Source: Mytilus trossulus
Lineage: Eukaryota
DNA length: 64,000 nt
Reading direction: 5' to 3'
Assembly (NCBI RefSeq): GCF_036588685.1
Contig: NC_086377.1
Coordinates: 11,718,001 to 11,782,000 of the forward strand
Position numbers and translations under genes: made by a program
The notes under the pieces: generated by a model
Told to the model about the DNA's origin: nothing
Databases searched by the model: none
What the model saw: the letters and a program-made list of their open reading frames with translations, nothing else
Shown: positions 8,135 to 62,500 of the stretch, piece after piece
Layout of the letters: each line of letters starts with the position of its first letter
Numbering within the stretch: position 1 is the stretch's first letter

Positions 8135-8531
8135 TTCCGGCCTTCTTAGCAGTGTGGACAGCAATTATTGATTATTTGAGGAGCAGTGATATAATCAAAT
8201 TTAACAAAGTTGTCACAAACATAGGCAATGATTATAGTCCCAGTACAGGAAAATTCAAAGCGCCAAAACAAGGTACCTACTTTTTTGGAGGTACAGTAAT
8301 GTCTGCTCCCCTAGTCCACTTAGTATGAAGTTGATGAAAAGTGGAACATCAATAATGAATCCCTATGCAAGCCAAACACAAGGAGATAGTTACACGTTTA
8401 CCGCCGTCTTGCAACTGAATGTAGGAGATACCGTTTATGTCGAGAAAGATAATAGACTGGGAGCGGAAAAGGCGTTTGGGCTTTCCCATTCTACATTATC
8501 TGGATTCATGATATCTGAACCTGAAAACTGA
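8135..8531 (+). pseudogene. C1q-domain-containing protein, exon 2 (gC1q domain) with a 1-bp frameshift (pseudogene or assembly error)
   Basis: After a TTTTAG acceptor it reads PAFLAV...IIKFNKVVTNIGNDYSPSTGKFKAPKQGTYFF (gC1q motif) and hits TGA at 8326. The domain resumes in another frame (SPLSMKLMKSG...LQLNVGDTVYV...STLSGFMI). Adding one C to the run at 8308-8311 restores the frame. Confidence 0.88.
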
Positions 8532-8681: not shown

Positions 8682-8910
8682 CACATGAGATAACAGACAT
8701 ATCAAAATACTACACATGAGATAACAGACATATCAAAATACTACACATGAGATAACAGAAGCATCAAATCACCACACATGAGATAACAGAAGTATCAAAT
8801 CACCACACATGAGATAACAGAAGTATCAAATCACCACAAATGAGATAACAGACATATCAAATCACCACACATGAGATAACAGAAGTATCAAATCACCACA
8901 CATGAGATAA
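8682..8910. repeat. 31-bp minisatellite, ~7 copies
   Basis: Unit CACATGAGATAACAGA(C/A)..ATCAAA.. starts at 8682, 8713, 8744 and onward. Confidence 0.9.
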
Positions 8911-44073: not shown

Positions 44074-47000
44074 CTGCATAGTGAAGGGTAGACAACAACC
44101 ATTCAAATGAAGGTTGTCCTTTTCATTTTTAGCCATGGCGTTGTCAGTTTATTTTCGATTAATGAGCCTGTTTGATTATTTGTTAATTGTTTATCTACAT
44201 GATCTATAAACCTTATCACATAATTTTACTAAGCAATTAAGCAAAGCACCACAGTCATTAAGTGTTTAAGTATACCAAACTAACCAACATTCTTAAAGTC
44301 TACATATATTATCTGAAAGAAAGGAAAATTGTCACATGACTTGACATGCACAAGATAAATTAAACTAATTATTTCATAGTTCATCTTGCATTTGTAATTA
44401 TTCAAATAATTGCAGTCAAGACTAGGAATATTTGTGTTGAATTTTCCGTGCATATAAAAAATTATATAATTGAAGTACGCCAAACGCAAATACTATTAAA
44501 GAAGACGACGACAGACCAGTACTATATTATAGATCGTTACAAAATGCGTGGAGAAGATTTTATAATTGCTTCTTGTGATTGAAATTACAATCGAAACAAA
44601 CAGATTATACCATTTACTATATCAGAGTTTGACGTTGCTAAGCATACAAATTCAAGAAGAATATATAATGACGTCATTATTGTCCAATGAAAAATAAGCA
44701 TGAAAAAGTACGGGGTAATAATCTTTGAAACTATTGACTGGCATAGAGTCTGTGGAATGAAATAGCACAACTGTTTCATTATTTTTATATATAAAAAACA
44801 TACTGAGGTAATATAATACCATAATATGATAATTGTTGTTAGACTGCACAAGGGAGGACATACAAAGTGTAAAATAATCCGACTTTATAACGAAAAAAAC
44901 AAACTGACAACATAAAAACTAGCTGTAAAAATCAATTACAAACATTGTTACGAGTATTATAGTTCTACTATACTCATAGAAAATACACTCAGTTACTTAG
45001 AATATTAAATTACGACTTAATATTGCCAATACGTTTGTTAATGGTTACTCTAGTTTTACGGTTGATGTCTTTTGAAAATGAACCTCTAAATATTTGACAC
45101 TTTTATTCATGAATATATCTTCCACATATAAACATTGTGAATGAACATTAACAAAAGTTGTTAAGATGGTAGGTGAGTAGTAAATAAAAATGATAAAATG
45201 TGTACATCAGCATTTGCTCAGACGAAGAATGATATGTTCGAACATATACTAAAATGATAGCTAGGTCACCGAGCTGTTGTGGATAAATGACACAGTTTGT
45301 ATGGTTTATATAGAGCATCATAACGTGAATAGAAAGTAAACCAAATGGTAGAATTTTGAAATAGATTATGATAACATAGCTCATCTAAAATGCTTTCAGA
45401 ATATAGTAAGGAAATATATGGTAACTGTACGTTTTTTCTGCTTTAATATAAAATAGAAAGTTTTCATGAAGATATGCAATGTTTAAAAAATCAAAATCAA
45501 GCACATATATTGTACTTTAAATATAAGTAATTATAATACACAATGCTCCTTCACTTTGTACTTTTTTTGGATTTTTTAACGTTTTCAGATTCGAACCTCA
45601 CTGATGAGTCTTTTTTTTTTAGATGAAACAGGCATCGGGCGTACATATTAAATTAATCCTTGTATCTATGATGAGTTTTTATACAGTTCATATTCATTTG
45701 TTTAATAACATGAGAACTCTCACAAGTTACATTTCTTTCATCGAAAGGAGTAGGTCCAGTAAAACCACTTTTTGGCCCAAAAATATAGCAGTTCTACAAA
45801 ATTATTAAAATGTAACTTTTTAGTTATTTATTGGAAAGTAAAATGCTTCTGCTATATAAATATGGGCTATTTTTGACAATACAATGCCAATATATCAAGT
45901 ACTACCTCATTTAGTCTTGCTTAATTACTGAAATCGTCACAATTTTAGCATTTTAGTTAAATTTTAGACGTTTTTGTCTCAAATGAAATTGGTTGTATTT
46001 GTATTCATTCTTAATAATAAAATATAAAATTTACTTGAGAATATTACATAACATATATAAAGGTTTAGGATGTTCACAGATGCGATCACTTTCATTTTTG
46101 CCAAAAATCCTCTAAAAAGTGATATTTTTTGGCATATTTGATAGATTTTAAATATCAAAGCCTGAATCAGAGCGTTTTTTATGATTGAATCGGTTAAAAT
46201 CTTTCACATAAACTAAGTGAATTAACTTAAATAGACACTTCAGTGTTTAAAATGTGTTTAACATATTTCGTTAGATGAACTTGAAATTTGAGGCAAAAAT
46301 CGTCTCTTGCAAGGTAAAAAAAAACCCACCCGTACTACTTACCTATTAGTGTATTGATGAATGATTGTTTGGTTAATGTAGCATATACCACTTCTGATAA
46401 TTTGAATTCTGTTTCATTCCAATGGATTTTCAAGTAAGTGCTCCAAATGTGGAATATGATCATTATCATCATTATTGCTAGTATCATAATTATATATTCA
46501 ATTTAGTTAAATCCTTTTGATCTCACGCATATGTTTCTTGCATGAACATTGAAGATATGAAAGACTCTACAGCCACATGGTGAATCGAAATGTAAACACA
46601 GGCAACATAATTCTAACAGACTAATCTGATTCAAGTATAACATATATTTGTTGACATGCAAATCATATAAGAATCATTGAATTATAAGTGATTTACTTTT
46701 TAAGACTTTTGATGATATGATAAGAACATGAATGACATACTATTATTTCGATACTCATGCCATGTTCCTGAGCATATAAGACAACCACAAATCATGATCA
46801 GGTTTACTTCAATCAGTTTTCCAGAACGTCCTTTTCTTATAATACCCAATGTTTTATTTACATGTAGTTACATACAGCAGTGTTGGAGTACATGGAACAC
46901 ATGCATACTGAACATTCGGGAATAAAAACAAATTTAAGGATATAATTCGCCAATCAGACAAAGAACACACTCTAAATTATAGTATTTGTATGCATCAATT

Positions 47001-47731
47001 CCTGAAATGTTCATCATTCAGCAATTTCAATAAAATATCCAAGCAATAACTGAAATCTTTGTTTATAAATGATTTTTCCTGGAGTTGTTGTTTTCCTTCT
47101 GTCATGACTCAGTTTATGCTGCTGCTTGAAATGAAGCTTTTGAGCAGAATTATCCTAATCAATATGATGGACATCTGTCTTAAAAGGTTAACTGACGCGC
47201 TGTTGATAACGTTGACCGTTATGTAATCGTTTTGTGACATCAAACCATGCTTATGTTGCCAAGGTGAAGCCACAATACCGTGTTGTGTTCGCTAGTTACT
47301 AAAACAAAAACGTATCATTGAATCTTTATATTATGAACACCATGATAAATTTTTATGTTCACTATATGTTTCCCTGACAGATGTTTGTTATTTTTACCTT
47401 TGTATGATCCCTCCTAGTGAACAAACAAGACTGATGTTGAAGTCAGAAGCCCTACAAAATTATATTCTGGAGTTTTGATAGTGTATTTAAAACATTTGTT
47501 AGGCTTAAAACTCTATAAATGACTTTGATTATGATAAAACTACTCCTGACAGAAACAACATTTTAGTTAACATTTTGCAAAGATTATTTTATTTGTAGCT
47601 ATAATCATAAATTATATCAAATAAAAAAATGTGTATATACAAAAAAAAACCATGAGGATCATAAGTTAAGAAGGAAATACATTTCTACTCCTATTTCTTT
47701 GTCTGGTAAATGCTTGTTACAGACTGTCTCT

Positions 47732-47759
47732 TTAATGTTCTTTGATATAACTCATAAAT
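47732..47759 (-). CDS. Micro-exon gene, terminal coding exon ((G)FMSYIKEH*)
   Basis: CATTTTTTCAG acceptor, TAA at 47734-47732, and AATAAA at 47593-47588. Confidence 0.7.
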
Positions 47760-50700
47760 CTGAAAAAATGGACAAATATTATCATTGTAATGTATGCACC
47801 ATAATTACATTATATCAATCCAAAATACTCGTACAAGTATAAATTTGTTGTTTTTTGTACTCTATGCGATTTGATTGCAATTGGTTTATTCTTCATGAAA
47901 CTAAACAGTATGTATGTATGTTCTGCTAAAATATTGTGTCTCTCAGTCCTGGCGTGGTTTGATTAAGCTACCCTGGTTTATATACTTACTAAATCAGGAG
48001 AGACTGTTGTTTATGTTGGTTCCGTTGCTTGCTCTTGAATTTGGTCATGATTTGACTAGATAATAAGTAGGTTTTGATGTTGACATTCGGTTTTTATTGT
48101 ACAAACGTCATAGAAGTCAAAGCTTCCGATTTGTTGAATATCGTACTCTATTGTTCAAGTTGTATTTAAGACATTTTTTTAACAGTACATGTTAGCTCTG
48201 TATAATATTGATTTATTCAGCTTATATTTATACTTTATACGTTGAGATGTTCTTTGTTTGGTGAGTAAATATCAAGTATAATAGCTTACCAATTGTTTTA
48301 AATGAAAACACGTTATTTCAGGACAGTCATTAAAACTAACTAAACAATAAGACAAGTGTCCCTCTAAAGAATATATTTGTAAACATAACGTATGTCATCC
48401 ATCTTCTCTATGAAACGCAAGTGAAAAGATTGTCTGCAGCAAAAATAACATAGAATATGTGGTTTGATTTTTAACGAGACATTTCTCCAAGAGAAACCGA
48501 ACGACAGAAAAATTGACAATTATAGGTCACAAAACCTTCTCTAACAACGAGACCCGAAATGGCAAATGTAAAACAATTCAAAAAAGAAACTAACGGCCTA
48601 ATTTTTGTTCAAAACTAAAACAAAAATATGTGAATTACAGGCTGTTCACTTGTGATAGGCACATACTCATAATTACATTAAGTAATGCCTATCATATGCT
48701 AAATGGAAGAATAAAACAAAAATACGCATGTCATATTTAATTTAACTGATAAACTAAATAAATACTTTAATCTCTAGGTCGTTGTATGACGATTTCATAC
48801 TATGAACTGTCAAGTCATCGAAGAGCAATATGGATTGTAATTTTTATCTGCAGTACTTACCCGCCACATGAACATCTACAATGAGAAAAGACTTAATTAT
48901 ATAAAAACAAGTCGCTCGGACATCATTATTAAACTGTACGTTAATTGGTTCAACAGTTAAACAAAATGTATAACTATTTAATGATGAAACATAAGATATT
49001 CATTGGATTTAAAGCTTAATATATGAACGTTCTAATATAAGCCACAATACACAAGTATTGGAGAGACTTATGTAATATATGTAATCATCTCTTTCTGATG
49101 TTATTCTTAAAAAAACAGAATTCAAAATATCGCCTAGCTTCTTATAACATTAATAGAATAATGTCTTTTTTTTTAAACTGGCTTTATATTTTCCCATTCG
49201 TCAAAAACACCACTCACACCATTCACTATATGGTGTCCATTCATTCTTATGTTCTGTAAACGTATCACAATATACTTATCTGTTTGGTACATAACACTTA
49301 CTGACAACTGAAAAATATAAAATAAAGTTTGAAATATAAGGAAAAACTTCACAAAATCCAAATACATATAAAACATCTTCTCAAAACATCAGTTATCAAT
49401 TTGCTAATTTTAAATATTGCTTTAAATTGCTTGTTTGTTGCTTAGATGAAACTGTGTGAATATTGTCGCTATTCAAACGATGCTTAAATATAAAAAAAAT
49501 GACAAACCAAGTTGTTAACATAACTATCTCCCCCCAAAAAAGTAAATGACTGTTCAAACCGTTTATTTCTTTTGTATTCTGTACTTGTTTTGACTTTCAA
49601 ACTTTTTTCATCTGAGCATAGTTTTCTGAGGACGAAACGCGCGTCTGGCGTATACATTTATTTTAACCTGGTACCCTTTGTTTCTGTGTCCTTTTTTTCT
49701 TCGATTTATTTATTGTAGCCCTGTCGTGTAATGTTGTCATTTTAATGTTATTATTAACATTACCATTAAAGCGGGAGGTTTGATATGCCACAAAAACAGG
49801 TTTAATCCACCATTATTTCATAAAATGCCTTTTTACAAAGTCAGGAAAATGGCCATTGTTACTTTATAGTTCGTTTCTGTGTGTGTTACATTTTGGTGTT
49901 GAGTTTCTGTTGTAATGTAGTTCTCTTATATTTGATATGTTTCACTCAGCTTAAGTTTGTAACCCGGATTTTTTTTTCTTTATCGATTTATGAATTTCGA
50001 ACAGCAGTATACTATTGTTGCCTTTATTTGGAGACGAAACAATTCATAATAGCATCAACTTTTTCTGTATGTGTTTTGTTTCTATGATGCTTATTGTAAT
50101 CATATAGCAATCATATAGCAATCACATAGCAATCATATAGCAATCATATAGCAATCATATAGCAATCATAGTACTGTAGCAAAAAATCTTAACTAATTAT
50201 GTCTGACTTGTTTCGCTTCGTCAAGTGCACGTTACTTTTATCAACATAAGCGCTTCGGGCGTTTTGAATTTTTTAAAGTGTTTTGCTTTTTTTGATAGAC
50301 AGAATAATTATGGAAACACAAAACATACAGAATTGTCGACATTCTTTTCAACATATGTTTACAAAACACGGGCAGTACACATAAACAAACACATGGCTGA
50401 AGGTTTTAAAACTCAGTCCCGAATTTCAAATCATGTCTTATAACTTAATAAACAGTAAACTCAGAAAAAAACTCTGAGGAAATTTCAAAACGGAAGGACT
50501 CTAATCAATTTATTCTCATATTTGAAAAGCTGAGAGCTGTTATTTAAGTACAAACATGCTGTGATTTGACTTTTAATCTTTATAAAAGGGTTATTTGAAA
50601 AAAAAAACACAAATAATAGTTATCTACCAATCAATTTAAAAACACTTCTTAAATATTTATCTTCATAAAATGGTACTAGTATGTTTATTGTTAAATTTTA

Positions 50701-53700
50701 CTGCTTTACTAACGCCATTGTATAACTATCGTCATATTATAGATTGCATTTATAATTGTTTTTTTTATACTTATCTGTGTGCTACTTGACACTTACAGGC
50801 TGAAAAATAAAAAAAACCAACATTGAATACAGCATTATATTGAATTATAAGCATAACGACATGGCAAAATTAAAATACACAACTCATCAAAAATGAATGG
50901 ACAAGAATTGTCATATTCCTGACTTGGTACAGACATTTTTTAAATGTAAAAAATGGTGGAATAACATCTGGTTCTAAAGCGCTAACCCTCTCACTTTGAT
51001 AACAGTCTCATCAAATTCCGTTATATTTACAATGATGCGTTAACTAAACAAACATAATAAATAATATAATCAAAATATGGGAAAAGCAGGCATCATCGTG
51101 TACCAATTTTAAAAGGAACAAGTTAACAGAACACAAAAACATCTATCTACAAACACATTCATTCATTTGCGTGAAACTGTGTAAATGTTGTCGCTATTTA
51201 AACGATGCTTAAATATAAAAAAATGACAAACCAAATTGTGAGCATGAATATCTCCACAAAAGATGTAAATGACTGTTTAAAGCGTATTATAATCTCTTTA
51301 GTTTTGGCTTTCAAACGTTTTTCATCTGAGCATAGTTTTGTGTGGATGTAACTCACGTCTGGCGTATAATTTTATCCTGTTACCTTTTTATGGCCATTAT
51401 TCGTTTACTTTCTCCGATCTATTTATTGTAGCCCTGTCGTGTAATGTTGTCATTTTAATGTTTTAACTAACATTGCCACAAAACCAGGTTCAGCCCATCA
51501 TTATTTCATAAAACACTTCTAAAATATTTCTCTTCATAAAATGGTACTAGTATATTTTTTTGTTAAACTTTACTACTCTGCTTACGCCATTTTAGAACTA
51601 TCGTTATATTATAAATTGCATATATAATTGTTTTCTATACTTATGTGTTTTCTACTTGACACTTACTTGCTGAAAAAATAAAAAAAATAATCACTGAAGA
51701 CAGCATAATATTGAATTATAGTTCAAAAACGTTGACCTTGAGTTGATTTAACCATATGCATTTATGTTGATATGTTAATAAAGTTCTCCAAATGAATTTT
51801 TTTTTATACTTTTTGGCTTTCCCCATCTCTGCTTTCAGTGTCTCTTATGCAGTATAATCTATGAAAGAGGACTGAAAGGTACTAGAGGGAAAGTCAAACT
51901 CATAAACTGAAAATGTCTGATTTGTTCCGCTTTGCTATAAAACATGACTCAAAATACTGATTTTGTTTTTGTGTATACTGCTGTTTGTCATGGCATTGCC
52001 TCCTTGTAGACGTACCTGTCTGAGATACATCATTAAATTGACATGATTATTTATTAACTTAGTAGTCTACTACTACCATTATAACAAAACCTTATATTAT
52101 AAATTGCTTATGTCCATACCTATTTCCTTGCCTAACTTGACACTAAATTGAGGGAAAACTCATACAAATATAACCATAGAAAAAAGCATACAATTTAGCA
52201 ATGAGATTTACCATCGACAATAGAAGAATACCAAAGGTATTTTTGATAGTAGAATATTTTGAAGTGACGGCTTGTTGTGGCAGATTATTAAATTAGTATA
52301 TAAATCAAGTATGTCAAACATTGGAATGTGGTATACAGTATGTGGTTGACTTAAACGTGTCGCTTTATAGATTTAAAAATCATTTAAGAACTAAGGTTGT
52401 ACCACATAAAAGTAAAGTTGAACTGAGGTTGAGTAATCTTGTTTTGCTTATGTTTTTTATAGTCAACTATTTAAACTATTTCGGTTATCATATGTCATTG
52501 GCTTTAAACATTTCTGGTTATACCGTTTTAACGAAGCTATATCATCTGACTCTTATGTTGACGGATAGCACGTCTGTATGACATTATTTATATGGTATGT
52601 GTATTGTAGTGCCTATTCTTTTTACTAACAATATTACATCAAACAACTTCTATTATGAATTGCATAATTTTGTAAATGTAAGCTTTACTTATCTGTTTGC
52701 TACTTGTAACTTACTAGCTGAAAAATGCAAATAATAATTATACACTACAGCATACAATTCAGCAATGAAGTAAAACAACTTCAGTAGAATTACTTGAATA
52801 AGTATCAATATCATACATTTTAAAATGAATTGTGTTATTTCAGATGATTGAAAAGTTTAGTTTATATTGATGTCAATTATTGATACGTGATATTTATGTG
52901 ATTTTTGGATTGGTACATCAAGACTTTCGAAAGACACTTTGGTGTTTTCATCCTAAAAAAGTTGACGTAAGTTAGTTATAATCATATTGATGCATTTTTT
53001 CCATAGACACATACTTCAACAGGTTTGGTACCTTTGATAACTATTTACACCACTGGGTCGATGCCTCTGGTGGACGTTTCGTCCCCGAGGGTATCACCAG
53101 CCCAGGAGTCAGCACTTCGGTGTTGACATGAATATCAACTCAGGATTTTCTTATCCCAGGCATAGATTACATTAGCCGTATTTGGCACAACTTTTTTGAA
53201 ATTTTGGATCCTCAGTGCTCTTCAATTTTGTATTTGTTTGGTTTATAACTATTTTGATATGAGCGTCACTGATGAGTCTTATGTAGACGAAAAGCGCGTC
53301 TGGCGTACTAAATTATAATCCTGGTACCTTTGATAACTATTTACACCACTGGGTCGATGCCTCTGCTGGTGGACGTTTCGTCCCCGAGGGTATCACCAGC
53401 CCAGTAGTCAGCACTTCGGCGTTGACATGAATATCAATTATGTGGTCATTTATATAAATTTCCTGTTTACAAAACTTTGAATTTTTGAAAAACTAAGGAT
53501 TTTCTTATCCCAGGCATAGATAACCTTAGCCGTATTTGGCACAACTTTTTTCGAATTTTGGATCCTCAATGCTCCTCAACTTTGTATTTGTTTGGTTTAT
53601 AGGTATTTTGATATGAGCGTCACTGATGAGTCTTATGTAGACGAAACGCGCGTCTGGCGTACTAAATTATAATCCTGGTACCATTGATAACTATTGGCCA

Positions 53701-56700
53701 TTAAACGTAGAAATGTTAGATAGGAAAATTTAAAATCAAATTTAAGAACATTTTTTGTCCATTGTATATGTTTTCTATCTACGTTTTACCTATTTTGAAA
53801 GAATTCAATCAATAATATTTCAGGATTAGAAAACAGAAATGCATTTTTTTTCTATATTCAGTAATAAAAAACAACAAGCAAAACATGTATATCAAATTTC
53901 AACAATTGTGTTCACTAAATAGGTAAAACAAGAGTAAAGAAAACAAGGATGTCTTTTTACTGTAGAGCACACATGTAATGAGGTAATTACGCCTTTAGTA
54001 AATGCTTCATGTATGTCATGTCTTTAAAATGTTTCACAAACATATTTACATTTAATTGAAATAGATTTTAATTGCAAATATGGTACGCATTTTTTGTCTA
54101 TTGTATATGCTTTCTATCTAACGTTTTACCTTTTTTGAAGGAATTTAATCAGTAATATTTCAGAATTGGAATTAAAAAAAAAAACGAGGATGTATGAGTA
54201 CCGACACCGTATGACAAAAATACCTAAAATTGATAACTAAATTCATCTTAAGTCAACTTTGCAAGAGGGAGTGGAAACCGTAGTTTCTAAATCATTTCAA
54301 AATTTATAAATGGACAATTTTAGAAAAGTTTGTTATGTTAAGTTATGTCAGTAACTAAGTACTGACTATTTATCGACGTTGTCAGTGTATATTAGACTTA
54401 TAAAACTAAATAGATATAGGAAGATGTGGTATGAGTGTCAATGAGTCAATTCTCCATTCAAATAACAATTTATAAAAGTAAACCATTATAGGTCAAAGTA
54501 CGGCCTTCAACACGGAGCCTTGGCCCACACATAACAACAAGCAATAAAGAGCCTCAAAATTACTAGACGTATAACCATTCAAACGGGAAAAACAACGGTA
54601 TAATCTATATAAAAGAACGAGAAACGTAAAACACGTATACATTACATAAACAAATGACAACTACTGTACATCAGATTTCTGACTTAGGACAGGTACAAAC
54701 ATTTGCTGCGGGCTTAAACGTTTAAATGGTACCAAACCTTCCCCCCGTCTTTTTCTGAAACATTAGTATAACATCACAACAAAGACAAACACACGATAAA
54801 ATATCATTCGAAAGGATTAACTCAATCCAAAAACGTAAACTAACTGTATGTTTGGTATCGTTTGAAGACGGGACACACGTTTATCAACATAATTTTAATC
54901 CTGATATTTTGTTAATACGTCTTTGATTGTGTAATATGTTTGCACTGGTAGTGCATTGCTAATTTCATACAATATACTTATCTGTGTGGTACATTATACT
55001 TACATTTTACTGAAACAATAAAAAAAATTATTTTCTTTACTAAGGCAAACAAGTGTTAATAATTTAATACTTTCAACATGTTCAATATAGAAAAAAAGTC
55101 ATTTTTTTATACTAGTAGTTATATTAGGCCGCGTTCACACCAAACGCCGTGTACAGTAAACATGTTTACATTTGGTTTAATGTGATGTAAGCTATTTTCA
55201 CATTAAATTTGTTCACATCTATACACCTTGTTAGGCTACCTGAACACACGATTTGTTCACACTTGTAAACTAAATGTCATTTAAATGTTCATTACGTAGA
55301 ACCGAATTTAAATTTTCGAACATCTTTTCAAGCAGATAGGGAACGACCATTTGACTTTAAAAAAAAGGGGGATGGATTTTTCAACAATTAGATTAAAAAA
55401 CAATCGGGTCATTCAGATGATTAGAATGAACACATATTCTGAATCCAAAGTTTTCCCATACATTATAGTATTAAATATTGAATTGGTACCATCGAAAAAA
55501 TCCAACTAATTTTAAACTTTCGCGCCAGAAAGATTCTGACTCAGAACCCCGTCTTATTTTTGAGTAAAGTGGTTGCTCCTTTAAGAAAGTCATTTTGGAT
55601 GATTTGCAGTAGTTTAAAGATGTCTCGGTTGCGCATTTAAACGCAGGCTCGCTATCAGCGTGCTTACAGAAGAAGAAAAAGAATTGCGATGTTAAGGATC
55701 ACTATATTTATATCTTTTCTGTTTGTTTCAAATGGTATTTTTTCTCCAAGGAGTATTTAGCAAAGGGAGTGGGTTATGTTTTTTTTTTATTATTTCTAAT
55801 TGTATTTTAACGGATCTGAGATACTACACAAACAAACAATTAACTTCACCCTTTTTTCAGTAATGCATGTATGAGTGAATCGTTGTTTGACTATAAAGAC
55901 CAGTGGCAAATATTTCTGTCAGTGTGTACGTCCAACCGATTCAGGAAGACCTTTTCAACTGAATCATGTGTTCGGCAATTATAATGAATGAGTCTTGATT
56001 CGGGATTAATAAGGCTGCGTAAAGTGTTTTTATAACAAATAAATATATAAAATTTAGACAAATAGTTCTGCAAAGAACTTTATTTATAAGTGTCATAAAT
56101 ATCCATTTTATATGAAAAATGTTTCTTTTTGAAATATACATGAGAAAATTAAAGTTCTGAATGCCTAGATTTGTGTTCACTTAACCTATACAAGGCCTAC
56201 ATCGACTATCGACTGCATGTAGACAAAACATGATTTACACTACATGTAAACATTGAGTTTTATCAATGGGAACGTAGTTGTGTTTAGTTTATGTGTGAGT
56301 TACACTTACACAACACCGAGTTTAGGTCAATGTGAACACGGCCTTAGTTGAATATTTTGAAAGAAAAGAGTAAACGTCTCATATGTAATGTCCTTTATCA
56401 AATTCAAAACAATATATATTGAAAAACCATTTTTTTATCACACAGTTTAGATTTAATACATGCATTTTATAATTGCTTTATTGAAATGTGTTCTTTTTTC
56501 CTTTAGGATTCCAAAAAAAATTCAGGTTAAGAGGTTTTATGTCTGTAAAATAACATATCAGATCACCGACAATCTTAAATGGAAAGTACTTTATCAAATG
56601 GCAAATCAAAGACCTAAATGCATCAGCCAAATACATCCATTTGTCATATTCCTGACCAGGTATAGGGATTTCCTTTACGAAAATGAGGGATTAAACCTGG

Positions 56701-58871
56701 TTGTACAACTAACTTAACCGATAATCTGCATGACAGTCGCACATAATGTCATTATATGAGCAACAATGTGTGAGCGAAACAAATTTAATATGTTAAAAGG
56801 GGACTATGTTTTTTTCAATTCCAGTATAATAAATATCAATTGTTCATTTTCTCAAAGGATATTTTCAACAAGATACAATGGGCATTCGAAAATCATAAAA
56901 GACAATAAAAGCATTCATCTCCTTGACATAAAAAGACAGCACTTTTCAAACAAACCATGGACAACTCAGTTGTAACATTTGTCGTGTTGCTCATGTTAGA
57001 ATCTAGTTTTTTGGGGAGTAAAATAAAACAAATTGTTGTTCGGAAAAATGTCACATATCCATGGTTATTATCATAACAATATTTGATTCAACGTCCTCTG
57101 TGCTATCAATAATCCCCAATCAAGAAAATCACGAAAAGTTATAAATCGCTTAGTGAAATTAATAAATCAAATTGTTGAAATCTCAAAGACCTGGTAAAAC
57201 ACCTCATAAATTAAAAATCGTAAACATGATTAGCTTCAACAATTTCCAGCTGTTATCATAAATATCTTGTTTAAATATTGCAGCACGTATCTTATGGTCA
57301 GTGTTTAATAAATTATTCTTTTATTTAATGTGTAATAGCAAAACGATCATGTGAATCAGATACACAATATGTAAACCTTGTCTACAGTAGATGACTATTT
57401 TTATAATAGACGTAGATAATACTTACACATTAACTCTCTTTTCCTGTCTGAAAGATAAAACAGATGGTGTCAGTGGTACATGTTCACGCACAATTTGTCT
57501 AAACAAACATACTGAAAGATATGCTGCTGGTCAATGTAAAATTATGACGCGTTTTTATTATTGAGAACTGTGGTCAAGTTCTTCGATGTTGTTCTGGAAA
57601 TTTCAATCAAACGAAGCTGTAATATTTTACCAGGAAATGAGTATAGTATTGTTAGACAAATTTTAAGTCGTCCTCGCACCATACATGTTTCTCTTTAAGA
57701 ATGACATCTATATACAGTTGAGAATGGAAATGATGAATGTGTCAAAGAGACAAAAACCAGACTTCAGAGTAACAAAAGGACAACGACCACCAATGGATCT
57801 GTAACACAGCGATAAAGTCCTGCAAGTTCCGTGAAAATAAACGTCATTCATATCTCCAATCACATTAAAGAACTGAAATTAAAATTGAAAAGACAAACAA
57901 AGACCATTTTCCTGAATTCAGAAACACGCAAAAATGCGGTGGCGTCAGAGAAGTTTAGTGAGATCCCAACTTTCCATATGCTTACATATCAAAGTATTTA
58001 CAAGTTGAGATGTAGAATTCTGCTCTTAAACACTCTTTCTGTTTTTTTTCCATTGATGGGTTTAACAGATTGCTAAAACATTGCAAACATCTACAATGTA
58101 TGTGGCTTTGAATAAGAACAAATGACAAAAGTCGCATTTTCGAAGACAAAACATATTCTGCACTTCATTGAAATTATGGAATAAACATGTGTTGTCTTCA
58201 TAAATTTGATACGCCATATGATGTAAATATTCAATTTTGTGTCATGTCTATAGAAACAATAATAATGAACTTACCGACAGTTGATACATCTAAACAGGTT
58301 TTTCCCTTGCTCCTTTGGCATCACATCCTGTTTGTATTCACTGTAATAAGCAACACTATTGATTGACATACAATTTACTCTTTTCGAAGATGATATTAAA
58401 ATCCAACAAGCTCTTACTAACTGATACACATATAAACAGTGCAAAAATATCAAAAAGGCATTTGAAATATATACGAGAGTCATAAACCAAGTTAATGAAT
58501 CTCGAATTAGGTGAAATAATAATCTATAAGAAAATATAAATCCGCTCACACCCAGACAGAACTGCAATTGTGTTTAACAGAAAGATATATTGCTTAAATT
58601 CAAAGAGGTTTCCAATGGTTTGTCAATACGTTGCGTGCCTAATGTTTGACAAGACCTTTTAATTAACTTCGACTTTTTATTTAGCTGTAATAGTCTTATT
58701 GGTGTATGTCGTTCCTTTAAAACAAATCGGATGACATCACCAAAACAATATAAAAGATTACACCAACAAGGAAACAATTGATTAAAGTCATTCTTTTTTT
58801 TTATATGTTCTAAATCCTCATAGAATTATTCCTAATTTGCATACACTTTTCCCTCTCTTTCCCTGTCTGTC
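47732..58871 (-). CDS. Micro-exon gene encoding a small C4 zinc-ribbon-like protein (at least 10 exons; 5' end unresolved)
   Basis: Exons 58871-58845, 58340-58275, 57447-57427, 55009-55004, 52717-52715, 51669-51667, 50799-50797, 49307-49302, 48875-48861 and 47759-47732. All have a pyrimidine tract plus AG; donors are GTAAGT (one GTATGC); all introns are phase 2. Joined, they read ...TDREREGKVEYKQDVMPKEQGKNLFRCINCRQEKRVNVKIYNLCQCSCGGFMSYIKEH*. Confidence 0.8.
48861..48875 (-). CDS. 15-nt micro-exon ATGTTCATGTGGCGG (CSCGG)
   Basis: CTTTTCTCATTGTAG | exon | GTAAGT. Confidence 0.8.
49302..49307 (-). CDS. 6-nt micro-exon TTGTCA
   Basis: TTTTATATTTTTCAG | TTGTCA | GTAAGT. Confidence 0.8.
50098..50170. 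repeat. 11-bp tandem repeat (AATCATATAGC), ~6.5 copies
   Basis: Directly visible in the sequence. Confidence 0.9.
50797..50799 (-). CDS. 3-nt micro-exon CCT
   Basis: TTTTTTTATTTTTCAG | CCT | GTAAGT. Confidence 0.75.
51667..51669 (-). CDS. 3-nt micro-exon CAA
   Basis: TTTTTTATTTTTTCAG | CAA | GTAAGT. Confidence 0.75.
52715..52717 (-). CDS. 3-nt micro-exon CTA
   Basis: TTTGCATTTTTCAG | CTA | GTAAGT. Confidence 0.75.
53263..53306 (+). ncRNA. Minimal type I hammerhead ribozyme, stem III mismatch
   Basis: GCGTCA-CTGATGA-GTCT.TATGT.AGAC-GAAA-AGCGCG-TC^TGGCGT. Confidence 0.8.
53617..53660 (+). ncRNA. Minimal type I hammerhead ribozyme, intact
   Basis: Stem I GCGTCA/TGGCGT, core CTGATGA...GAAA, stem II GTCT/AGAC, and a minimal stem III with a palindromic GCGC loop. 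GUC cleavage is predicted after 53654. Confidence 0.92.
55004..55009 (-). CDS. 6-nt micro-exon TAAAAT
   Basis: TTTTTTATTGTTTCAG | TAAAAT | GTAAGT. Confidence 0.78.
55127..56343. mobile_element. Non-autonomous PIF/Harbinger-like element with a nested MITE (~55337-55583)
   Basis: TIR GGCCG(C/T)GTTCACA with a TTA TSD at 55124-55126 and 56344-56346. The nested element starts TAGGGAACGACCATTTGA, related to the end at about 1895-1915. Confidence 0.8.
57427..57447 (-). CDS. 21-nt micro-exon (QEKRVN)
   Basis: TGTTTTATCTTTCAG | ACAGGAAAAGAGAGTTAATGT | GTAAGT. Confidence 0.8.
58275..58340 (-). CDS. 66-nt exon of the micro-exon gene (EYKQDVMPKEQGKNLFRCINC), contains the candidate start ATG
   Basis: CTTATTACAG | exon | GTAAGT. 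Only the phase-2 frame is open. Confidence 0.8.
58845..58871 (-). CDS. 27-nt micro-exon (coding TDREREGK, or 5' UTR)
   Basis: TTTTTTATTGTTTGTAG | GACAGACAGGGAAAGAGAGGGAAAAGT | GTATGC. Confidence 0.6.
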
Positions 58872-59404
58872 CTACAAACAATAAAAAACTAAATGAAATG
58901 ACGAACTATTTTAATTGAACCATTCATAAAACAGCATATTTGTAATCTCGTTTCAACTTGTTGAAAAACTATATACGATTTCTCCAATCATTTTGTAATG
59001 ACTGATAGTTCTCAATTATACTATAAAATCGAAACCACTTGTACTAATTTTATGTGCATTTCGGGAATGTGACTGATTAAACCATTCACCCGTCAACAAA
59101 AGTCGATTGTGAAAGTGATTACTGGAATACTGGATTCGTTAATCTACAGTCTACTGTCAATGTGACTGCTGAATCGTTTACCATTTCATCAACAGTCGAT
59201 TGTAAATGTGAATGATCAAGTGGTTGAACTCCTCAAGACGACAGTCCATTGCGAATAACTTTGTGAATCGATAATATGTTAAAAAGAGTTAAAAATATCA
59301 CAAAGAGGACATTTCCATATGAGGAAAGATATGATATACGAAGACTATTTACAAAAGTACAGACTACACTTAACAAAACAGTATGACTTTGTTATTATTG
59401 TTGT

Positions 59405-59580
59405 AAAAGAAGAGGGACGAATGATACAAAAGGGACAGTCTAACTCATAAATCTAAAACAAACTGACATCGCCATGTCTAAAAATGAAACAGACAAACAG
59501 AAACGCAATAGTACACATGACACAACATAGAAAACTAAAGATTAAACAACACGAACCCCACCAAAAACTAGGGGTGATAT
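59405..59580 (+). mobile_element. Interspersed repeat family (GAAGAGGGACGAA.GATAC.AAAGGGACAGTC end)
   Basis: Homologues at about 2095-2228(-), 22440-22610(-), 41835-41995(-), 42310-42420(+) and 51865-51915(+). Confidence 0.75.
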
Positions 59581-62500
59581 GGCGTCTTTTGATTGCCTCA
59601 ATAGTTAAGATAACTGTGATGAATGACTTTTATATTTTGGTTATATCGTTTAAGTTTAAAGAGTTTCTAAATATTTCAACTAGATAAGCAGGCACGTTTT
59701 AACGAAAATTAAATGCAACAAAATCTTACCACTATTGAAAAGAATTTATGATACTAGTATGCGTTTGCATATCATAAAAAGACAAATTTACTTATATGTA
59801 ATCGTGCTCGAGCCAGTGTGTTCTAACGTACTTAGTGGAAAAACGCGGAGATACATAAACCATAGAGGCATTCTATAAGTATAAACAGGTTTTAAATATA
59901 TATTAACTAGACAAACTGGCACATTTTAACGAGCAGTATATTAACTGAAATTAGATGCAACAAAATCTAAACCCTATTGAAAAAATGTATGCTACTAGTA
60001 TGCGTGTGTATATCATAAGAAGACTTATTTTATTGTGTAATTCACTCAAACATTTGATAACAAGTTAACATTGTCAATTACGTAAATCTAAAAACTGTAA
60101 AATATACAAATATATTTCCCTACCTCTTGGGTGAAGGCAGTTCATGGTTTGTTGTGTACGCATTTCACTAATAAAAGACAACTGAAATTTTCACATTTTT
60201 TTTCAAAGGTTTTGTCAAGTGTCAGGAGTATAACAGTTGTTAACACATTTTCTTTGTATGTTGGCGTTTGTTTTTGTAGCAGTACTGTGTTAATGTTGTG
60301 CTGTTGCTTTTCACTTGTAGTTGATGGGTGTTTCCCTCAGTTTTGTTCTGATTTTTTCTCAGTTTAATCGACATATTACTACTATAAAGCGGTATACTTT
60401 TATCGTCGTTATTTCTTTTATAATATTGCATAAAATGCATGAAATTAGAATAACATATTTAAATAACGAGAAAAACAGATAAGTCTGTTCTTGTTTGAAA
60501 GCAAGTATTTTTGCATTTCAATATATGTTTACATATTGTCAAGATTGGTAAATGTACATGTATCAATACAACTTAAACTGTACACTGCCATTTATCTACT
60601 GGAGCACATTTTGAATCCATAAAATTGAACAATACATGTGTAATGAACACATACATGTATTTCATGAATTATCTCCCCTTCGACTGTCATATCATATCCA
60701 GACATAAGTTGATATTAAAAAAAAACTACTTATATGTGATTTTTCAAAAATACGTTTCTCATCTAAATACTATGGTTATATTAGAGCTTTCTTACAAATT
60801 TACGAAAGGTACGTATGCTTGACGAATCATACGCAAAACTCGTTTTAGGGAGCCTTTATTTTGACATATTTAAATAGTCCTGGGACTTTGAACAATTATC
60901 CTACATGCAATTACACTTATTAAACGGATTTTTTCTTGACAAGTACACAAAAACTGTCGCATTGGAAGAGAAAGCAGATTCTGCTCTACATGACAATGCA
61001 ATTCTGCTTACTCTTACATAACATACACCATTTGAAGATACATGTATGTGCCTGTTTCAAGTCAGGAGCCTATAATTCAGTGGTTGTCGTTTGTTAATAT
61101 GTTACATATTTGTTTTTCGATAAAAAAATAAATTATATAGATAAGGCAGATTGTTTTATCGTTTGAATTGTTTTATATTGTCATATCGGGGCCTTTTATA
61201 GCTGATTATGTATTATGAGCTTTCCTCCTTGTTGAAAGCCGTACGATGACCTATAGTTGTTTATGTCTGTGTCGTTTTAGTCTCTTGTGGACAGTTGTGT
61301 CATTGGCAATCATACCACATCTTCTTTTTTCTATGTCCTCTCTTCCAATATGAATGAGGGAAGAAAATAAATAAACACAAGAAACTTCAAAGTTAACCGT
61401 TGAATACCAACAAGAAATTGATATCGTTCATGTTTTCTCAAAACTAGTCCCAGTATTTTAAAGTATATTAAGCAAAAGAAAAGGCATGTTGGGACCTTTC
61501 AACATAACATTGACAAACAATCAAACAAAAACACAAATACATTATTTGTTTAACTTAATGTTTACTTACTGTTCTAAATCGATTTGTGAAATGAAGGATT
61601 ATTAGTGCAACAAAACAGAAATCAAAATATTACATCCCGTAAAAGAGATAAAGGCAACATAAGTATACCGCTGTTCAAAACTCATAAATCGTAAAAAATA
61701 ATCCTGGTTACAACGTAATGTAAAATGTAGCATATTAATCTATTGCAATAAAAATTCATAATTTCAAATAAAATTTGTAGATTTAGCTAACTAGTTCCTT
61801 ATATTAGTATAAAATAACATTCGTTTATAGTGGAACATTGTTTTAACAATGTATTAGCTACAATTAAAATTTGCTTGCTAGTCCCTCTCTGTGATCGCAA
61901 AAAGATAACTCTGACTCATTTCCCAATTCCCAGTGGAAGATACTAGCAGGCAAAATCGAGGGAATTGTGCAAATGATGATACAAGCATGAAAATTACCAC
62001 AAAGCATCATTATTACATACTTTTGAAGAAACAACTGCTGGCCATTAAAAAAAAATAAATTTCAAGATGGCCACCGCCGTTTTATCAAATGGCTGTTTTT
62101 TTCAGTTTAAAAATACTGATTTTTTTCTGGAAAACTTTTCGTTTACCTTCTTTTAGTGAAAAACAGCTGTCAGGTTTGGTAGCTTCCTTCTTAACATGTG
62201 AATAATTCACAAGACATGAGTATTTGACACATACAGGGTTTGCACATGCGCGAAAATGTAACAAAATTCATTAAAAAATATTTTAACTATTTACTATAAA
62301 ATAATTGATTTGGGATTTTCACTGATATTATGATTTGGTTTGATAACATTTTTCAAGGTTATGACTCGCATGATTTAACAAATTTGCGCATGCGCAAACT
62401 ATTTATAGACATAATGAGTGATTTGTATGCACTACCAGGGCAAACTGGTATAAATCGTAGTTCATCTCATTACGCGAAAAAGCAAGTATTACTAAAATAT

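What the first reader, a model, noticed from the sequence alone, without database searches (positions are those of the whole stretch)
49270..55030. Micro-exons arose by tandem duplication of an exon-plus-intron cassette; one dead copy remains
Seen: the five 3/6-nt exons share downstream intron sequence (GTAAGT-gtcaagtagcacacaG-ATAAGTA and variants), and larger blocks are duplicated (49449-49820 vs 51173-51510; 50640-50850 vs 51510-51720). Splice signals are conserved between copies while the exon bases all differ (CCT, CAA, CTA, TTGTCA, TAAAAT). A sixth copy at about 52090-52205 keeps the flanks (TAACTTGACAC; GCATACAATTTAGCAATG) but has lost both AG and GTAAGT. The 27-nt and 21-nt exons also resemble each other (ACAGG.AAAGAGAG). 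Inference: birth-and-death evolution of single-codon exons with exon divergence exceeding intron divergence, which suggests diversifying selection.
Basis: partly seen in the sequence, partly recalled or inferred. Interest (0 to 1): 0.8.

Follow-up and report, generated by a model that had tools for sequence, protein, structure and literature searches.

The report
Duplicated three-base exon cassettes in mussel
A mussel gene fragment carries five exons only three or six bases long, each inside the same conserved splice-signal cassette that was copied many times within a family of about 40 genes, which shows how a protein loop can grow, shrink and vary one or two amino acids at a time.

Summary
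Five minus-strand units share a pyrimidine tract-CAG, 3 or 6 exon bases, GTAAGT, a spacer and (CAG)ATAAGTA. A decayed sixth copy and the larger duplicated blocks are also present.

The cassette is not a genome-wide transposon. Every listed genomic match lies on one chromosome, at C5 8.1-10.6 Mb plus this locus. It belongs to a family of about 40 Mytilus B-box/coiled-coil (TRIM-like) genes.

In sister genes, one RefSeq protein tail maps to a single exon chain of 3, 3, 6, 3, 3, 6, 3, 6 and 15 nt built from these cassettes (0 of 200 shuffled tails map). All 78 cassettes with an acceptor have exons of 3, 6 or 9 nt.

Tandem duplication and death of cassettes are well supported across the family. 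The window's own cassettes, however, are positional orthologues inherited from an ancestor, not born here.

The window copy lacks the B-box exon and carries a 13-nt frameshift, so it is probably a tail-only relic.

"Exon faster than intron" is not shown for the window. Its exon bases are 67% identical to their orthologues, flanks 73% and the splice core 96%. It does hold elsewhere in the family.

No RNA run was listed, so splicing here stays unproven. The scan had already noted this family and the dead-donor motif 1.9 Mb away.

The parts
54968..55028 (-). Cassette 1: 6-nt micro-exon TAAAAT (55009-55004) with its pyrimidine tract-CAG, GTAAGT donor and distal CAGATAAGTA
   Evidence: the orthologous cassette in the sister gene at C5:9710589 has exon ATTAAT
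52670..52738 (-). Cassette 2: 3-nt micro-exon CTA (52717-52715)
   Evidence: groups with the CTA cassettes of two sister genes, support 100/99
51618..51693 (-). Cassette 3: 3-nt micro-exon CAA (51669-51667); distal motif CACATAAGTA
   Evidence: nearest relatives are type-E cassettes of other genes, support 96/99
50758..50822 (-). Cassette 4: 3-nt micro-exon CCT (50799-50797)
49264..49323 (-). Cassette 5: 6-nt micro-exon TTGTCA (49307-49302), the last cassette type ('F') of the family
   Evidence: core 31/31 identical to the sister gene's cassette
52040..52240 (-). Dead cassette (relic core about 52105-52145): AG, GT and distal motif all lost; orthologous to the 'type D' (CTT) cassettes
   Evidence: (D6, D13)
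49447..49825 (-). Block X, duplicated as X' at 51172-51513; includes a fragment that resembles the hammerhead-bearing repeat
   Evidence: D2, D8, D10, D16, D17, D19
50639..50850 (-). Block Y (holds cassette 4), duplicated as Y' at 51510-51720 (holds cassette 3)
   Evidence: D7, D11, D18
60124..60167 (-). 'Exon A' homologue: 44 nt here against 57 nt in sister genes, so a 13-nt deletion shifts the frame
58275..58340 (-). 66-nt exon encoding the CxxC knuckle; an internal coding exon in the family. The in-frame ATG is present only in this copy (1 of 40)
57427..57447 (-). 21-nt exon, phase 2-2
   Evidence: used in the RefSeq model P0004 of a sister gene
48861..48875 (-). 15-nt exon encoding the second Cys knuckle (C-S-C-G-G in the phase-2 frame)
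47588..47759 (-). Last exon: 25 coding nt plus stop (47759-47732), a conserved 3' UTR and AATAAA at 47593-47588
58845..58871 (-).

Best explanation
The five units are micro-exon cassettes in the C-terminal 'tail' part of a gene. That gene belongs to a Mytilus family of about 40 tandemly arrayed B-box/coiled-coil (RING-less, TRIM-like) genes.

Anatomy of a cassette: a pyrimidine tract plus CAG; then 3, 6 or 9 exon bases; then a consensus donor GTAAGT; then a spacer. It ends with a second, donor-like motif, (CAG)ATAAGTA(T), which begins 14-22 nt past the first base of the real donor. This motif is complementary to the 5' end of the genome's own U1 snRNA at 10 of 11 positions but has A where cleavage needs G.

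Role in sister genes: a chain of these phase-2 exons encodes the variable loop between a CxxCG knuckle (66-nt exon) and a CSCGG knuckle (15-nt exon).

Origin: the cassettes multiplied by tandem duplication of exon-plus-intron units, singly or in groups of three. This happened both before and during the expansion of the gene family. Copies die by losing the AG, the GT or the distal motif.

The window's copy inherited its five live cassettes and one dead one. It has lost the B-box/coiled-coil exon and carries a frameshift in the first tail exon, so it is most likely a tail-only relic.

Inferred, not shown: the distal motif binds U1 so that an exon too short for ordinary exon definition is recognised. 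The real GTAAGT is then used because the distal site cannot be cut.
For: Family and restriction to one locus.
- The pattern has 246 genomic matches against 2 for its reversed control. All 100 listed are on C5 between 8.14 and 11.80 Mb.
- A 116-nt cassette query gave 40 of 40 scored matches on C5.
- The 66-nt exon has 39 copies, the last exon 28 matches and exon A 38 copies, all on C5.

Coding constraints.
- The 66-nt exon is open in 38 of 40 copies. Two of its three indels are in frame, +3 and -6.
- Exon A has ATG in 15/15 copies and ends with two spare bases in 14/15, as the downstream frame requires.
- The last exon reaches a stop at codon 8-9 of that frame in 14/14 copies. Diversity is 0.263 in the 25 coding nt, against 0.069 in the intron and 0.066 in the UTR.
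- 78 of 78 cassettes with an acceptor have exons of 3 (66), 6 (10) or 9 (2) nt.

Use as exons.
- The 25 residues after CxxC in RefSeq protein P0007 map to exactly one chain in C5:8478283-8492770: exons of 3, 3, 6, 3, 3, 6, 3, 6 and 15 nt plus the last exon, all with GTAAGT donors.
- 0 of 200 shuffled tails gave a chain; the best partial match was 3 of 25.
- P0004 maps for 13 of 27 residues in the part of its gene that was fetched, again through cassettes.

Distal motif.
- Identity between 11 cassette types is 1.00 at +1..+6, 0.81 at +7..+19, 0.96 at +20..+29 and 0.33-0.41 beyond.
- 13 of 13 micro-exons used in the two mapped models have ATAAGTA downstream. The 5 of 5 skipped AG-CGT-GT units lack it.
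- The U1 gene starts ATACTTACCTGG.

Duplication and death.

Truncation of the window copy.
- There is no B-box/coiled-coil match in the window or in the 20 kb fetched upstream. The nearest such exons lie 41 and 58 kb upstream.
- Homology to a sister gene stops within about 40 nt of where the big exon would end.
- Exon A has a 13-nt deletion.
Against: - No RNA evidence. The look-up of sequencing runs listed no RNA run, so read laying could not be used.
- RefSeq models are predictions whose supporting evidence I could not see. Other models of the same family read the tail in other frames or stop early (P0006, P0017, P0021 and all M. californianus and M. coruscus models). Only 4 proteins in the database carry the full tail, all from this species' RefSeq.
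- The 13-versus-5 used/skipped contrast is essentially one cassette type (CGT) against the rest, so it is not 18 independent events.
- Skipping any micro-exon keeps the frame, so the frame alone does not prove inclusion.
- The window copy lacks a start in the family's frame. Its splice cores are nevertheless 96% conserved, which a long-dead relic would not easily explain.
- The tail has no Pfam match, and the AlphaFold model is unreliable there, with block-mean pLDDT 30-60. 'Zinc knuckle' is therefore only a reading of the Cys pattern.
Confidence: 0.75

Rival explanations
1. The differences among the window's micro-exon bases are ancient divergence between cassette types plus neutral drift in a dead, truncated gene copy. 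They are not the result of diversifying selection.
For: Against their nearest orthologues, the exon bases are 14/21 identical and the flanks 1198/1639 (p=0.47). The copy has no B-box exon, a 13-nt frameshift in exon A and one dead cassette. Several cassette types never vary across genes in the sample: CGT n=15 and TTG n=4, and CTA in all 3 copies seen.
Against: The five AG+29-nt cores are 149/155 identical to their orthologues, against 73% for the flanks. This points to constraint until recently or still. Elsewhere in the family, coding bases change faster than introns. Type B exons have diversity 0.333 against flanks of 0.03-0.075. Type A exons have 0.464 against 0.023-0.108. The last-exon coding stretch has 0.263 against 0.069. 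One residue inside CxxC takes at least 11 states in 40 copies.
Confidence: 0.5
2. The cassettes are not exons. They are a locus-restricted intronic repeat, for example splice-site decoys or recursive-splice-like sites, and the RefSeq tails that thread through them are annotation artefacts.
For: There is no RNA evidence here. RefSeq models of the family disagree with one another. No protein derived from a transcript assembly carries the tail.
Against: 78 of 78 exon lengths are multiples of three. The micro-exon bases have GC 0.41 against 0.26 in the flanks. The P0007 chain is unique, and 0 of 200 shuffled tails map. The frame set by the 66-nt exon agrees with exon A upstream and with the stop in the last exon downstream. 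An ab initio predictor has no reason to choose eight exons of 3-6 nt.
Confidence: 0.08
3. The distal ATAAGTA motif is conserved for a reason other than U1 binding. It could be the site of another splicing factor, part of a short structure, or a by-product of gene conversion between cassettes.
For: Nothing here tests binding. The middle of the core (AAGTAG) is also conserved (0.81). In two used 6-nt exons the motif lies closer to the donor and lacks the CAG.
Against: The motif matches the complement of the U1 5' end at 10 of 11 positions. It is 0.96 identical between types whose flanks are near random. Cassettes without it are skipped in the mapped models.
Confidence: 0.25
4. The cassette is a fragment of a genome-wide transposon that happens to carry AG-NNN-GTAAGT.
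For: Transposon debris is common in these introns, for example the hammerhead-bearing repeats at 53026-53695.
Against: All 100 listed pattern matches and all 40 scored 116-nt matches lie on C5 between 8.14 and 11.80 Mb. They are in register with the other exons of the family. 146 one-mismatch matches were not listed and so were not seen.
Confidence: 0.01

Closest known systems
Micro-exon genes (MEGs) of Schistosoma mansoni
   Same: Both have strings of very short exons, mostly multiples of three, separated by introns of 0.1-5 kb. Both families are clustered, grew by duplication and show elevated replacement change, and exon skipping keeps the frame. For MEGs this comes from PMC10526429 (passages read; abstract in the listing) and PMC4350168 (start of abstract only).
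   Different: In MEGs most of the coding region is built from micro-exons, typically 15 nt, and the products are secreted proteins with a signal peptide. Here only the C-terminal loop of a B-box/coiled-coil protein is built this way. The exons are mostly 3 nt. Each sits in a conserved cassette with a dead donor. There is no sequence relationship, and the host is a mollusc, not a flatworm.
Recursive splicing: RS-exons of vertebrates and ratchet points of Drosophila
   Same: A 3' splice site is followed almost at once by a strong GTAAGT donor. In vertebrates a downstream donor first defines an 'RS-exon' (PMC6224609, start of abstract seen in the listing; the Drosophila consensus is recalled).
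   Different: Recursive sites leave no bases in the mRNA, whereas here 3-9 bases stay. The downstream donor-like site here has A at +1, so, from recalled general knowledge, it should not be usable for splicing.
Intronic, non-productive U1 snRNP sites (ATM intronic splicing processing element) and the U1-linked factor PRP-40/PRPF40A in micro-exon splicing
   Same: U1-complementary intronic sequence that is not itself a splice site can steer the processing of neighbouring sites (PMC2790898). U1-associated PRP-40 is required for micro-exon inclusion (PMC8378409, PMC11648925). For all three papers only the start of the abstract in the listing was seen.
   Different: Those cases are single loci or trans-factors. 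Here a fixed cis motif at a fixed distance accompanies every very short exon of a gene family and is duplicated together with it.
TRIM / B-box-coiled-coil proteins with variable C-terminal recognition domains
   Same: Sister genes encode two B-boxes (PF00643, E about 1e-12) and a coiled coil with a weak TRIM_CC match. They are named TRIM71-like and similar in RefSeq. The variable part is C-terminal.
   Different: The Pfam scan found no RING. The tail is a Cys-containing piece of about 70 residues with no Pfam match, not a PRY-SPRY, NHL or filamin domain. The window copy has no B-box exon at all.

Membership tests
Schistosome-type micro-exon gene (MEG) | Most of the coding sequence is made of micro-exons whose lengths are multiples of three | tested here: not met
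   The lengths are multiples of three in 78/78 cassettes. However, only about 25 of 325 residues of the mapped sister protein come from exons of 15 nt or less; the rest comes from one exon of about 770 nt plus exons of 57 and 66 nt.
Schistosome-type micro-exon gene (MEG) | N-terminal signal peptide and a secreted product | tested here: inconclusive
   Sister proteins start directly with a B-box (Pfam positions 10-50 and 62-99). No signal-peptide predictor was available.
TRIM-like B-box/coiled-coil family of Mytilus (this family) | B-box and coiled-coil exon upstream of the tail | tested here: not met
   This holds for the window copy only. There was no match in the window, L043 or L042. The nearest B-box exons are at C5:11819365-11820096 and 11836165-11836896. 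Sister genes do have the exon about 0.7 kb upstream of exon A.
TRIM-like B-box/coiled-coil family of Mytilus (this family) | Tail exons in order: exon A, 66-nt CxxC exon, 21-nt exon, micro-exon cassettes, 15-nt exon, last exon | tested here: met
   All are present and colinear with sister genes at 78-88% identity. Exon A carries a 13-nt deletion.
Recursive splice site | The 3' and 5' splice sites abut (AG|GT), so no exon bases remain | tested here: not met
   3, 6 or 9 bases lie between the AG and the GT in 78/78 cassettes.
Known RNA families (Rfam) | Match of the cassette to a curated RNA family | tested here: not met
   Only two hammerhead type I matches were found in window 46500-60000, at 53263-53306 and 53617-53660, inside a repeat and not in a cassette.
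Zinc ribbon / zinc knuckle fold for the tail | Two Cys knuckles on beta hairpins that bind zinc | tested here: inconclusive
   The Cys pattern CxxCG ... C ... CSCGG is present. There is no Pfam hit in the tail. The AlphaFold2 model has 10-residue block-mean pLDDT of 30-60 over residues 251-325.

The most novel reading that the evidence does not exclude
The cassette is a portable, self-sufficient 'micro-exon module'. A dead donor acts as a U1 landing pad and lets the spliceosome accept exons of a single base triplet. Because every module is phase 2-2 and can be duplicated, lost or skipped without breaking the frame, a TRIM-like, possibly immune, gene family can tune the length and sequence of a recognition loop residue by residue. 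It would do so in the germ line by unequal crossing-over and perhaps in the soma by combinatorial skipping.
Probability: 0.3. Interest if true: 0.85.

Novelty: new variant of a known kind. Interest (0 to 1): 0.6.

Why it matters
Exons of 3 nt are usually isolated curiosities. Here, up to eight exons of 3-6 nt run in a row, and the arrangement recurs across about 40 genes with one conserved cis module.

This gives many natural replicates for asking how a spliceosome defines an exon shorter than its own footprint. It also offers a built-in natural contrast: cassettes that keep the AG and GT but lack the distal motif are left out of the annotated proteins.

It shows a way to make length and sequence variation in a protein loop by copying exon-plus-intron units.

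It is also a practical warning. Most annotated proteins of this family in other Mytilus species stop before the micro-exons, so such tails are easily missed.

I found no paper on micro-exon genes in molluscs. Searches listed none, though 89 of the 119 papers that mention 'micro-exon gene' were not listed.

Tried and rejected
- RNA evidence. The look-up of sequencing runs on window 46700-47800 (last exon and conserved 3' flank) listed no RNA run, so read laying was never called. Splicing of the window copy remains unchecked.
- Reading the 66-nt exon as the start of a 43-aa microprotein. Rejected for the family, because the in-frame ATG exists in 1 of 40 copies and a conserved upstream exon supplies the frame.
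- Phase-0 reading (one exon = one codon). It makes several differences synonymous, which was tempting. It was rejected for four reasons. The 21-nt exon has a phase-0 stop in the window and in the three sister copies I read in that frame from the sequences. One last exon and one 15-nt exon have phase-0 stops. The variable stretch of the last exon ends exactly at the phase-2 stop. RefSeq tails with CSCGG use phase 2.
- A type A' unit ('...AGAAAACAA|GTAGGT') as a 41-nt or 9-nt exon. Rejected: there is no pyrimidine tract (0.45-0.50), its upstream half has been replaced, and it is not used in the mapped models.
- A search for a signal-peptide exon upstream led nowhere.
- Rfam scan of 46500-60000: hammerheads only.
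- Pfam scan of the tail: nothing.
- Structure prediction of a sister protein. The tail had low confidence, so no fold search was run.
- Tail-only protein searches found nothing outside four RefSeq proteins of this species.
- A stop-avoidance test across micro-exon junctions was not run. The GC-rich exon bases leave it with little power.
- Related species could not be compared at the DNA level, because the genome collection holds no relatives.

Full report
1. WHAT IS IN THE WINDOW

The window is C5:11718001-11782000 of a 1.3-Gb genome. Database names for its proteins give Mytilus trossulus.

Read on the minus strand, five places share one plan. Each has a pyrimidine tract ending in CAG, then 3 or 6 bases, then GTAAGT, a 16-nt spacer and ATAAGTA. 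The exon bases are:
- TAAAAT at 55009-55004
- CTA at 52717-52715
- CAA at 51669-51667
- CCT at 50799-50797
- TTGTCA at 49307-49302

A degenerate 29-nt pattern matches five times, against 0.00 expected. A profile built from 50 cassettes of other genes, with the window excluded, finds exactly these five in 64 kb and nothing else at E<=10.

So is the decayed sixth copy. Window 52040-52240 aligns over about 170 nt with 'type D' cassettes of sister genes and has lost the AG, the GT and the distal motif.

2. NOT A TRANSPOSON: A GENE FAMILY

The pattern occurs 246 times in the genome at up to one mismatch, against 2 for its reversed control. All 100 listed places lie on C5 between 8.14 and 11.80 Mb; 146 were not listed. 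A 116-nt cassette query gave 40 scored matches out of 121 candidates, all on C5.

The other small exons of the window gene are repeated in step, all on C5:
- the 66-nt exon, 39 matches
- the last exon, 28 matches
- an upstream 'exon A', 38 matches

The window gene is colinear with sister genes, introns included, at 78-88% identity from about 60800 to 46760.

3. WHAT THE GENES ARE

I tested this.

About 0.7 kb upstream of exon A of one sister gene lies a 244-codon open frame with two B-boxes and a coiled coil. It finds 53 proteins, the best being RefSeq 'TRIM71-like [Mytilus trossulus]', with relatives in four other Mytilus species. Pfam gives zf-B_box at E about 1e-12 and a weak TRIM_CC match. 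It finds no RING and nothing in the last 70 residues.

Four RefSeq proteins of this species continue past the coiled coil through exon A and the CxxCG exon to a CSCGG motif and a short end. Most models in the other species stop at or just after CxxCG.

4. ARE THE TINY UNITS EXONS?

No RNA run was listed for the locus, so there is no direct proof. Four indirect lines agree.

(a) Lengths. Among 100 cassette cores in the fetched DNA, 78 have a pyrimidine-backed AG. Their exon lengths are 3 (66), 6 (10) or 9 (2) and never anything else.

(b) One frame fits everything.
- The 66-nt exon is open in 38 of 40 copies in a single frame and leaves two spare bases. Its indels are +3, -6 and one -1.
- Exon A has ATG in 15 of 15 copies and also ends with two spare bases in 14 of 15.
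- In that frame, the last exon stops at codon 8-9 in 14 of 14 copies.
- All introns are therefore phase 2. A 3-nt exon gives the last base of one codon and the first two bases of the next.

(c) Mapping a RefSeq tail. A search for any ordered exon chain that reproduces the 25 residues after CxxC of P0007 found exactly one chain in C5:8478283-8492770. The search required an AG with at least 12 pyrimidines in the 20 bases before it, a donor from a short list of donor hexamer starts (GTAAG/GTGAG and a few GTA variants) and introns of 6 kb or less. The chain has exons of 3, 3, 6, 3, 3, 6, 3, 6 and 15 nt plus the last exon, all with GTAAGT donors, and these are the cassettes. None of 200 shuffled tails gave a chain; the best partial match was 3 of 25. 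P0004 maps through a 21-nt exon and five cassettes for 13 of 27 residues. The rest of that gene was not fetched.

(d) Composition. Micro-exon bases have GC 0.41, against 0.26 in the flanks.

These are annotation-level and evolutionary arguments, not reads. Other RefSeq models of the family use other frames (P0006, P0017, P0021), so the annotation is not uniform.

5. THE CONSERVED CORE

Between 11 cassette types, with one representative each, mean pairwise identity is:
- 1.00 at +1..+6
- 0.81 at +7..+19
- 0.96 at +20..+29
- 0.33-0.41 beyond +30 and upstream of -20, which is near random for this base composition

The distal ten bases read ACAGATAAGTA. The genome's U1 genes begin ATACTTACCTGG. 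CAG-ATAAGTAT therefore pairs with U1 at 10 of 11 positions and fails only at the position that must be G for cleavage.

In the two mapped genes, all 13 micro-exons that RefSeq uses have ATAAGTA starting 14-22 nt past the first base of the donor. The 5 units that RefSeq skips have AG, a pyrimidine tract and GTAAGT (one has GTAACT) but carry AAATGTA, AAAAGTA or AAAAACA instead. All five skipped units are of the 'CGT' type, so this is close to a single evolutionary contrast.

The longer exons (66, 21 and 15 nt) do not have the motif at that distance.

My reading is inference. U1 bound at the dead site lets the 3' splice site of a 3-nt exon be recognised without a clash. The true donor is then used. 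The scan had proposed the same reading on other DNA (s1-823579). I reached it independently before seeing that note and only partly tested it.

6. DUPLICATION AND DEATH

Cassette types are positional orthologues across genes.

In a tree of 19 cassette regions of 340 nt:
- The window's CTA unit groups with the CTA units of two other genes (support 100/99).
- Its CAA unit groups with units of two other genes (96/99).
- Its CCT unit lies elsewhere in the same clade.

Recent births also exist. One sister gene has a 3.1-kb unit of three cassettes in three copies with branch lengths of about 0.006. Another repeats a unit of about 1.5 kb holding three cassettes.

Deaths are of several kinds:
- loss of the AG (aaccaCTT)
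- loss of the GT (GAAAGT)
- replacement of the upstream half (type A')
- loss of the distal motif (CGT type)
- loss of everything, as in the window's relic

7. SELECTION

Within orthologous types the picture is mixed.
- Type B (n=10) has exon diversity 0.333, against 0.03-0.075 in the flanks.
- Type A (n=8) has 0.464, against 0.023-0.108.
- CGT (n=15) and TTG (n=4) never vary.

The 25 coding bases of the last exon have diversity 0.263, against 0.069 and 0.066 on either side. The residue between the two Cys of CxxC is the most variable in the 66-nt exon. Coding change faster than intron change therefore exists in the family.

For the window's own five cassettes against their nearest orthologues:
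- exon bases 14/21 identical
- flanks 1198/1639 identical
- AG+29-nt cores 149/155 identical
- exon versus flank p=0.47; core versus flank p=4.5e-13

8. THE WINDOW COPY ITSELF

- It has no B-box/coiled-coil exon. There was no hit in the window or in the 20 kb fetched upstream. The genome search places the nearest such exons 41 and 58 kb upstream, and the nearer one has an internal stop.
- Homology to a sister gene ends within about 40 nt of where the big exon's donor would be.
- Exon A is 44 nt instead of 57, which shifts the frame.

The copy is most simply a tail-only relic. Yet its splice cores are nearly intact, which I cannot explain if it has been dead for long.

Supplementary files of papers were not consulted.

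9. COMPARISON WITH WHAT IS KNOWN

The nearest analogue is the micro-exon gene class of schistosomes. These have short symmetric exons, form clusters, grew by duplication and show fast replacement change (PMC10526429, passages read).

The present family is not a member of that class. It is a mollusc B-box protein, only its tail is made of micro-exons, those exons are mostly 3 nt, and each carries a conserved dead donor.

Four literature searches listed no mollusc micro-exon gene family. The listings were partial.

Noticed in passing
window 53026-53695 (+ strand): There are two hammerhead type I ribozyme matches (53263-53306, 22.3 bits; 53617-53660, 33 bits, gathering score 34). They lie inside a 354-nt direct repeat (53137-53341 vs 53491-53695, 94%) within an intron of the tail gene. 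Related fragments occur in blocks X and X'.
   Followed up: partly
window 50081-50179: An 11-nt tandem repeat (unit about ATCATATAGCA, 7 registered copies) lies in the stretch that separates blocks Y and X. This stretch is missing from the duplicate Y'X'.
   Followed up: no
G000:C14:50.05-50.22 Mb (L057-L059): U1 snRNA genes lie in a long tandem array with a period of about 1.3 kb. All 42 scored matches were over the Rfam cut-off, out of thousands of candidates.
   Followed up: no
G000:C11:28.9-37.7 Mb and C14:70-77 Mb: There are further large clusters of B-box/coiled-coil exons, 45-51% and 25-33% identical to the C5 family. The cassette pattern had no listed match there, so these clusters probably carry other kinds of tail.
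   Followed up: no
RefSeq proteins P0006, P0017, P0021 and the M. californianus / M. coruscus models: Models of the same family read the tail in other frames or end just after CxxCG. These are probably annotation errors caused by missed micro-exons.
   Followed up: partly
L102 (C5:9819201-9828800), 8138-8160 and 8885-8890: This sister copy has a stop right after the start (MAQAAS*) and another where other copies continue (…LFG*), so it is probably a pseudogene. Copy L083 has a stop and L080 a 1-nt deletion in the 66-nt exon. L038 has a stop in exon A.
   Followed up: partly
L042 (C5:11803422 and 11804933, minus strand): Two more cassettes (6-nt and 3-nt exons) lie 25-27 kb upstream of the window gene, in the same orientation. 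They probably belong to the neighbouring gene whose B-box exon is at C5:11819365-11820096 and has an internal TGA.
   Followed up: no
window 58310-58318 and all 40 copies of the 66-nt exon: An out-of-frame ATG followed at once by TGA (…GGATGTGA…) is kept in nearly all copies. In the window copy alone the TGA overlaps a second ATG (ATGTGATG).
   Followed up: no
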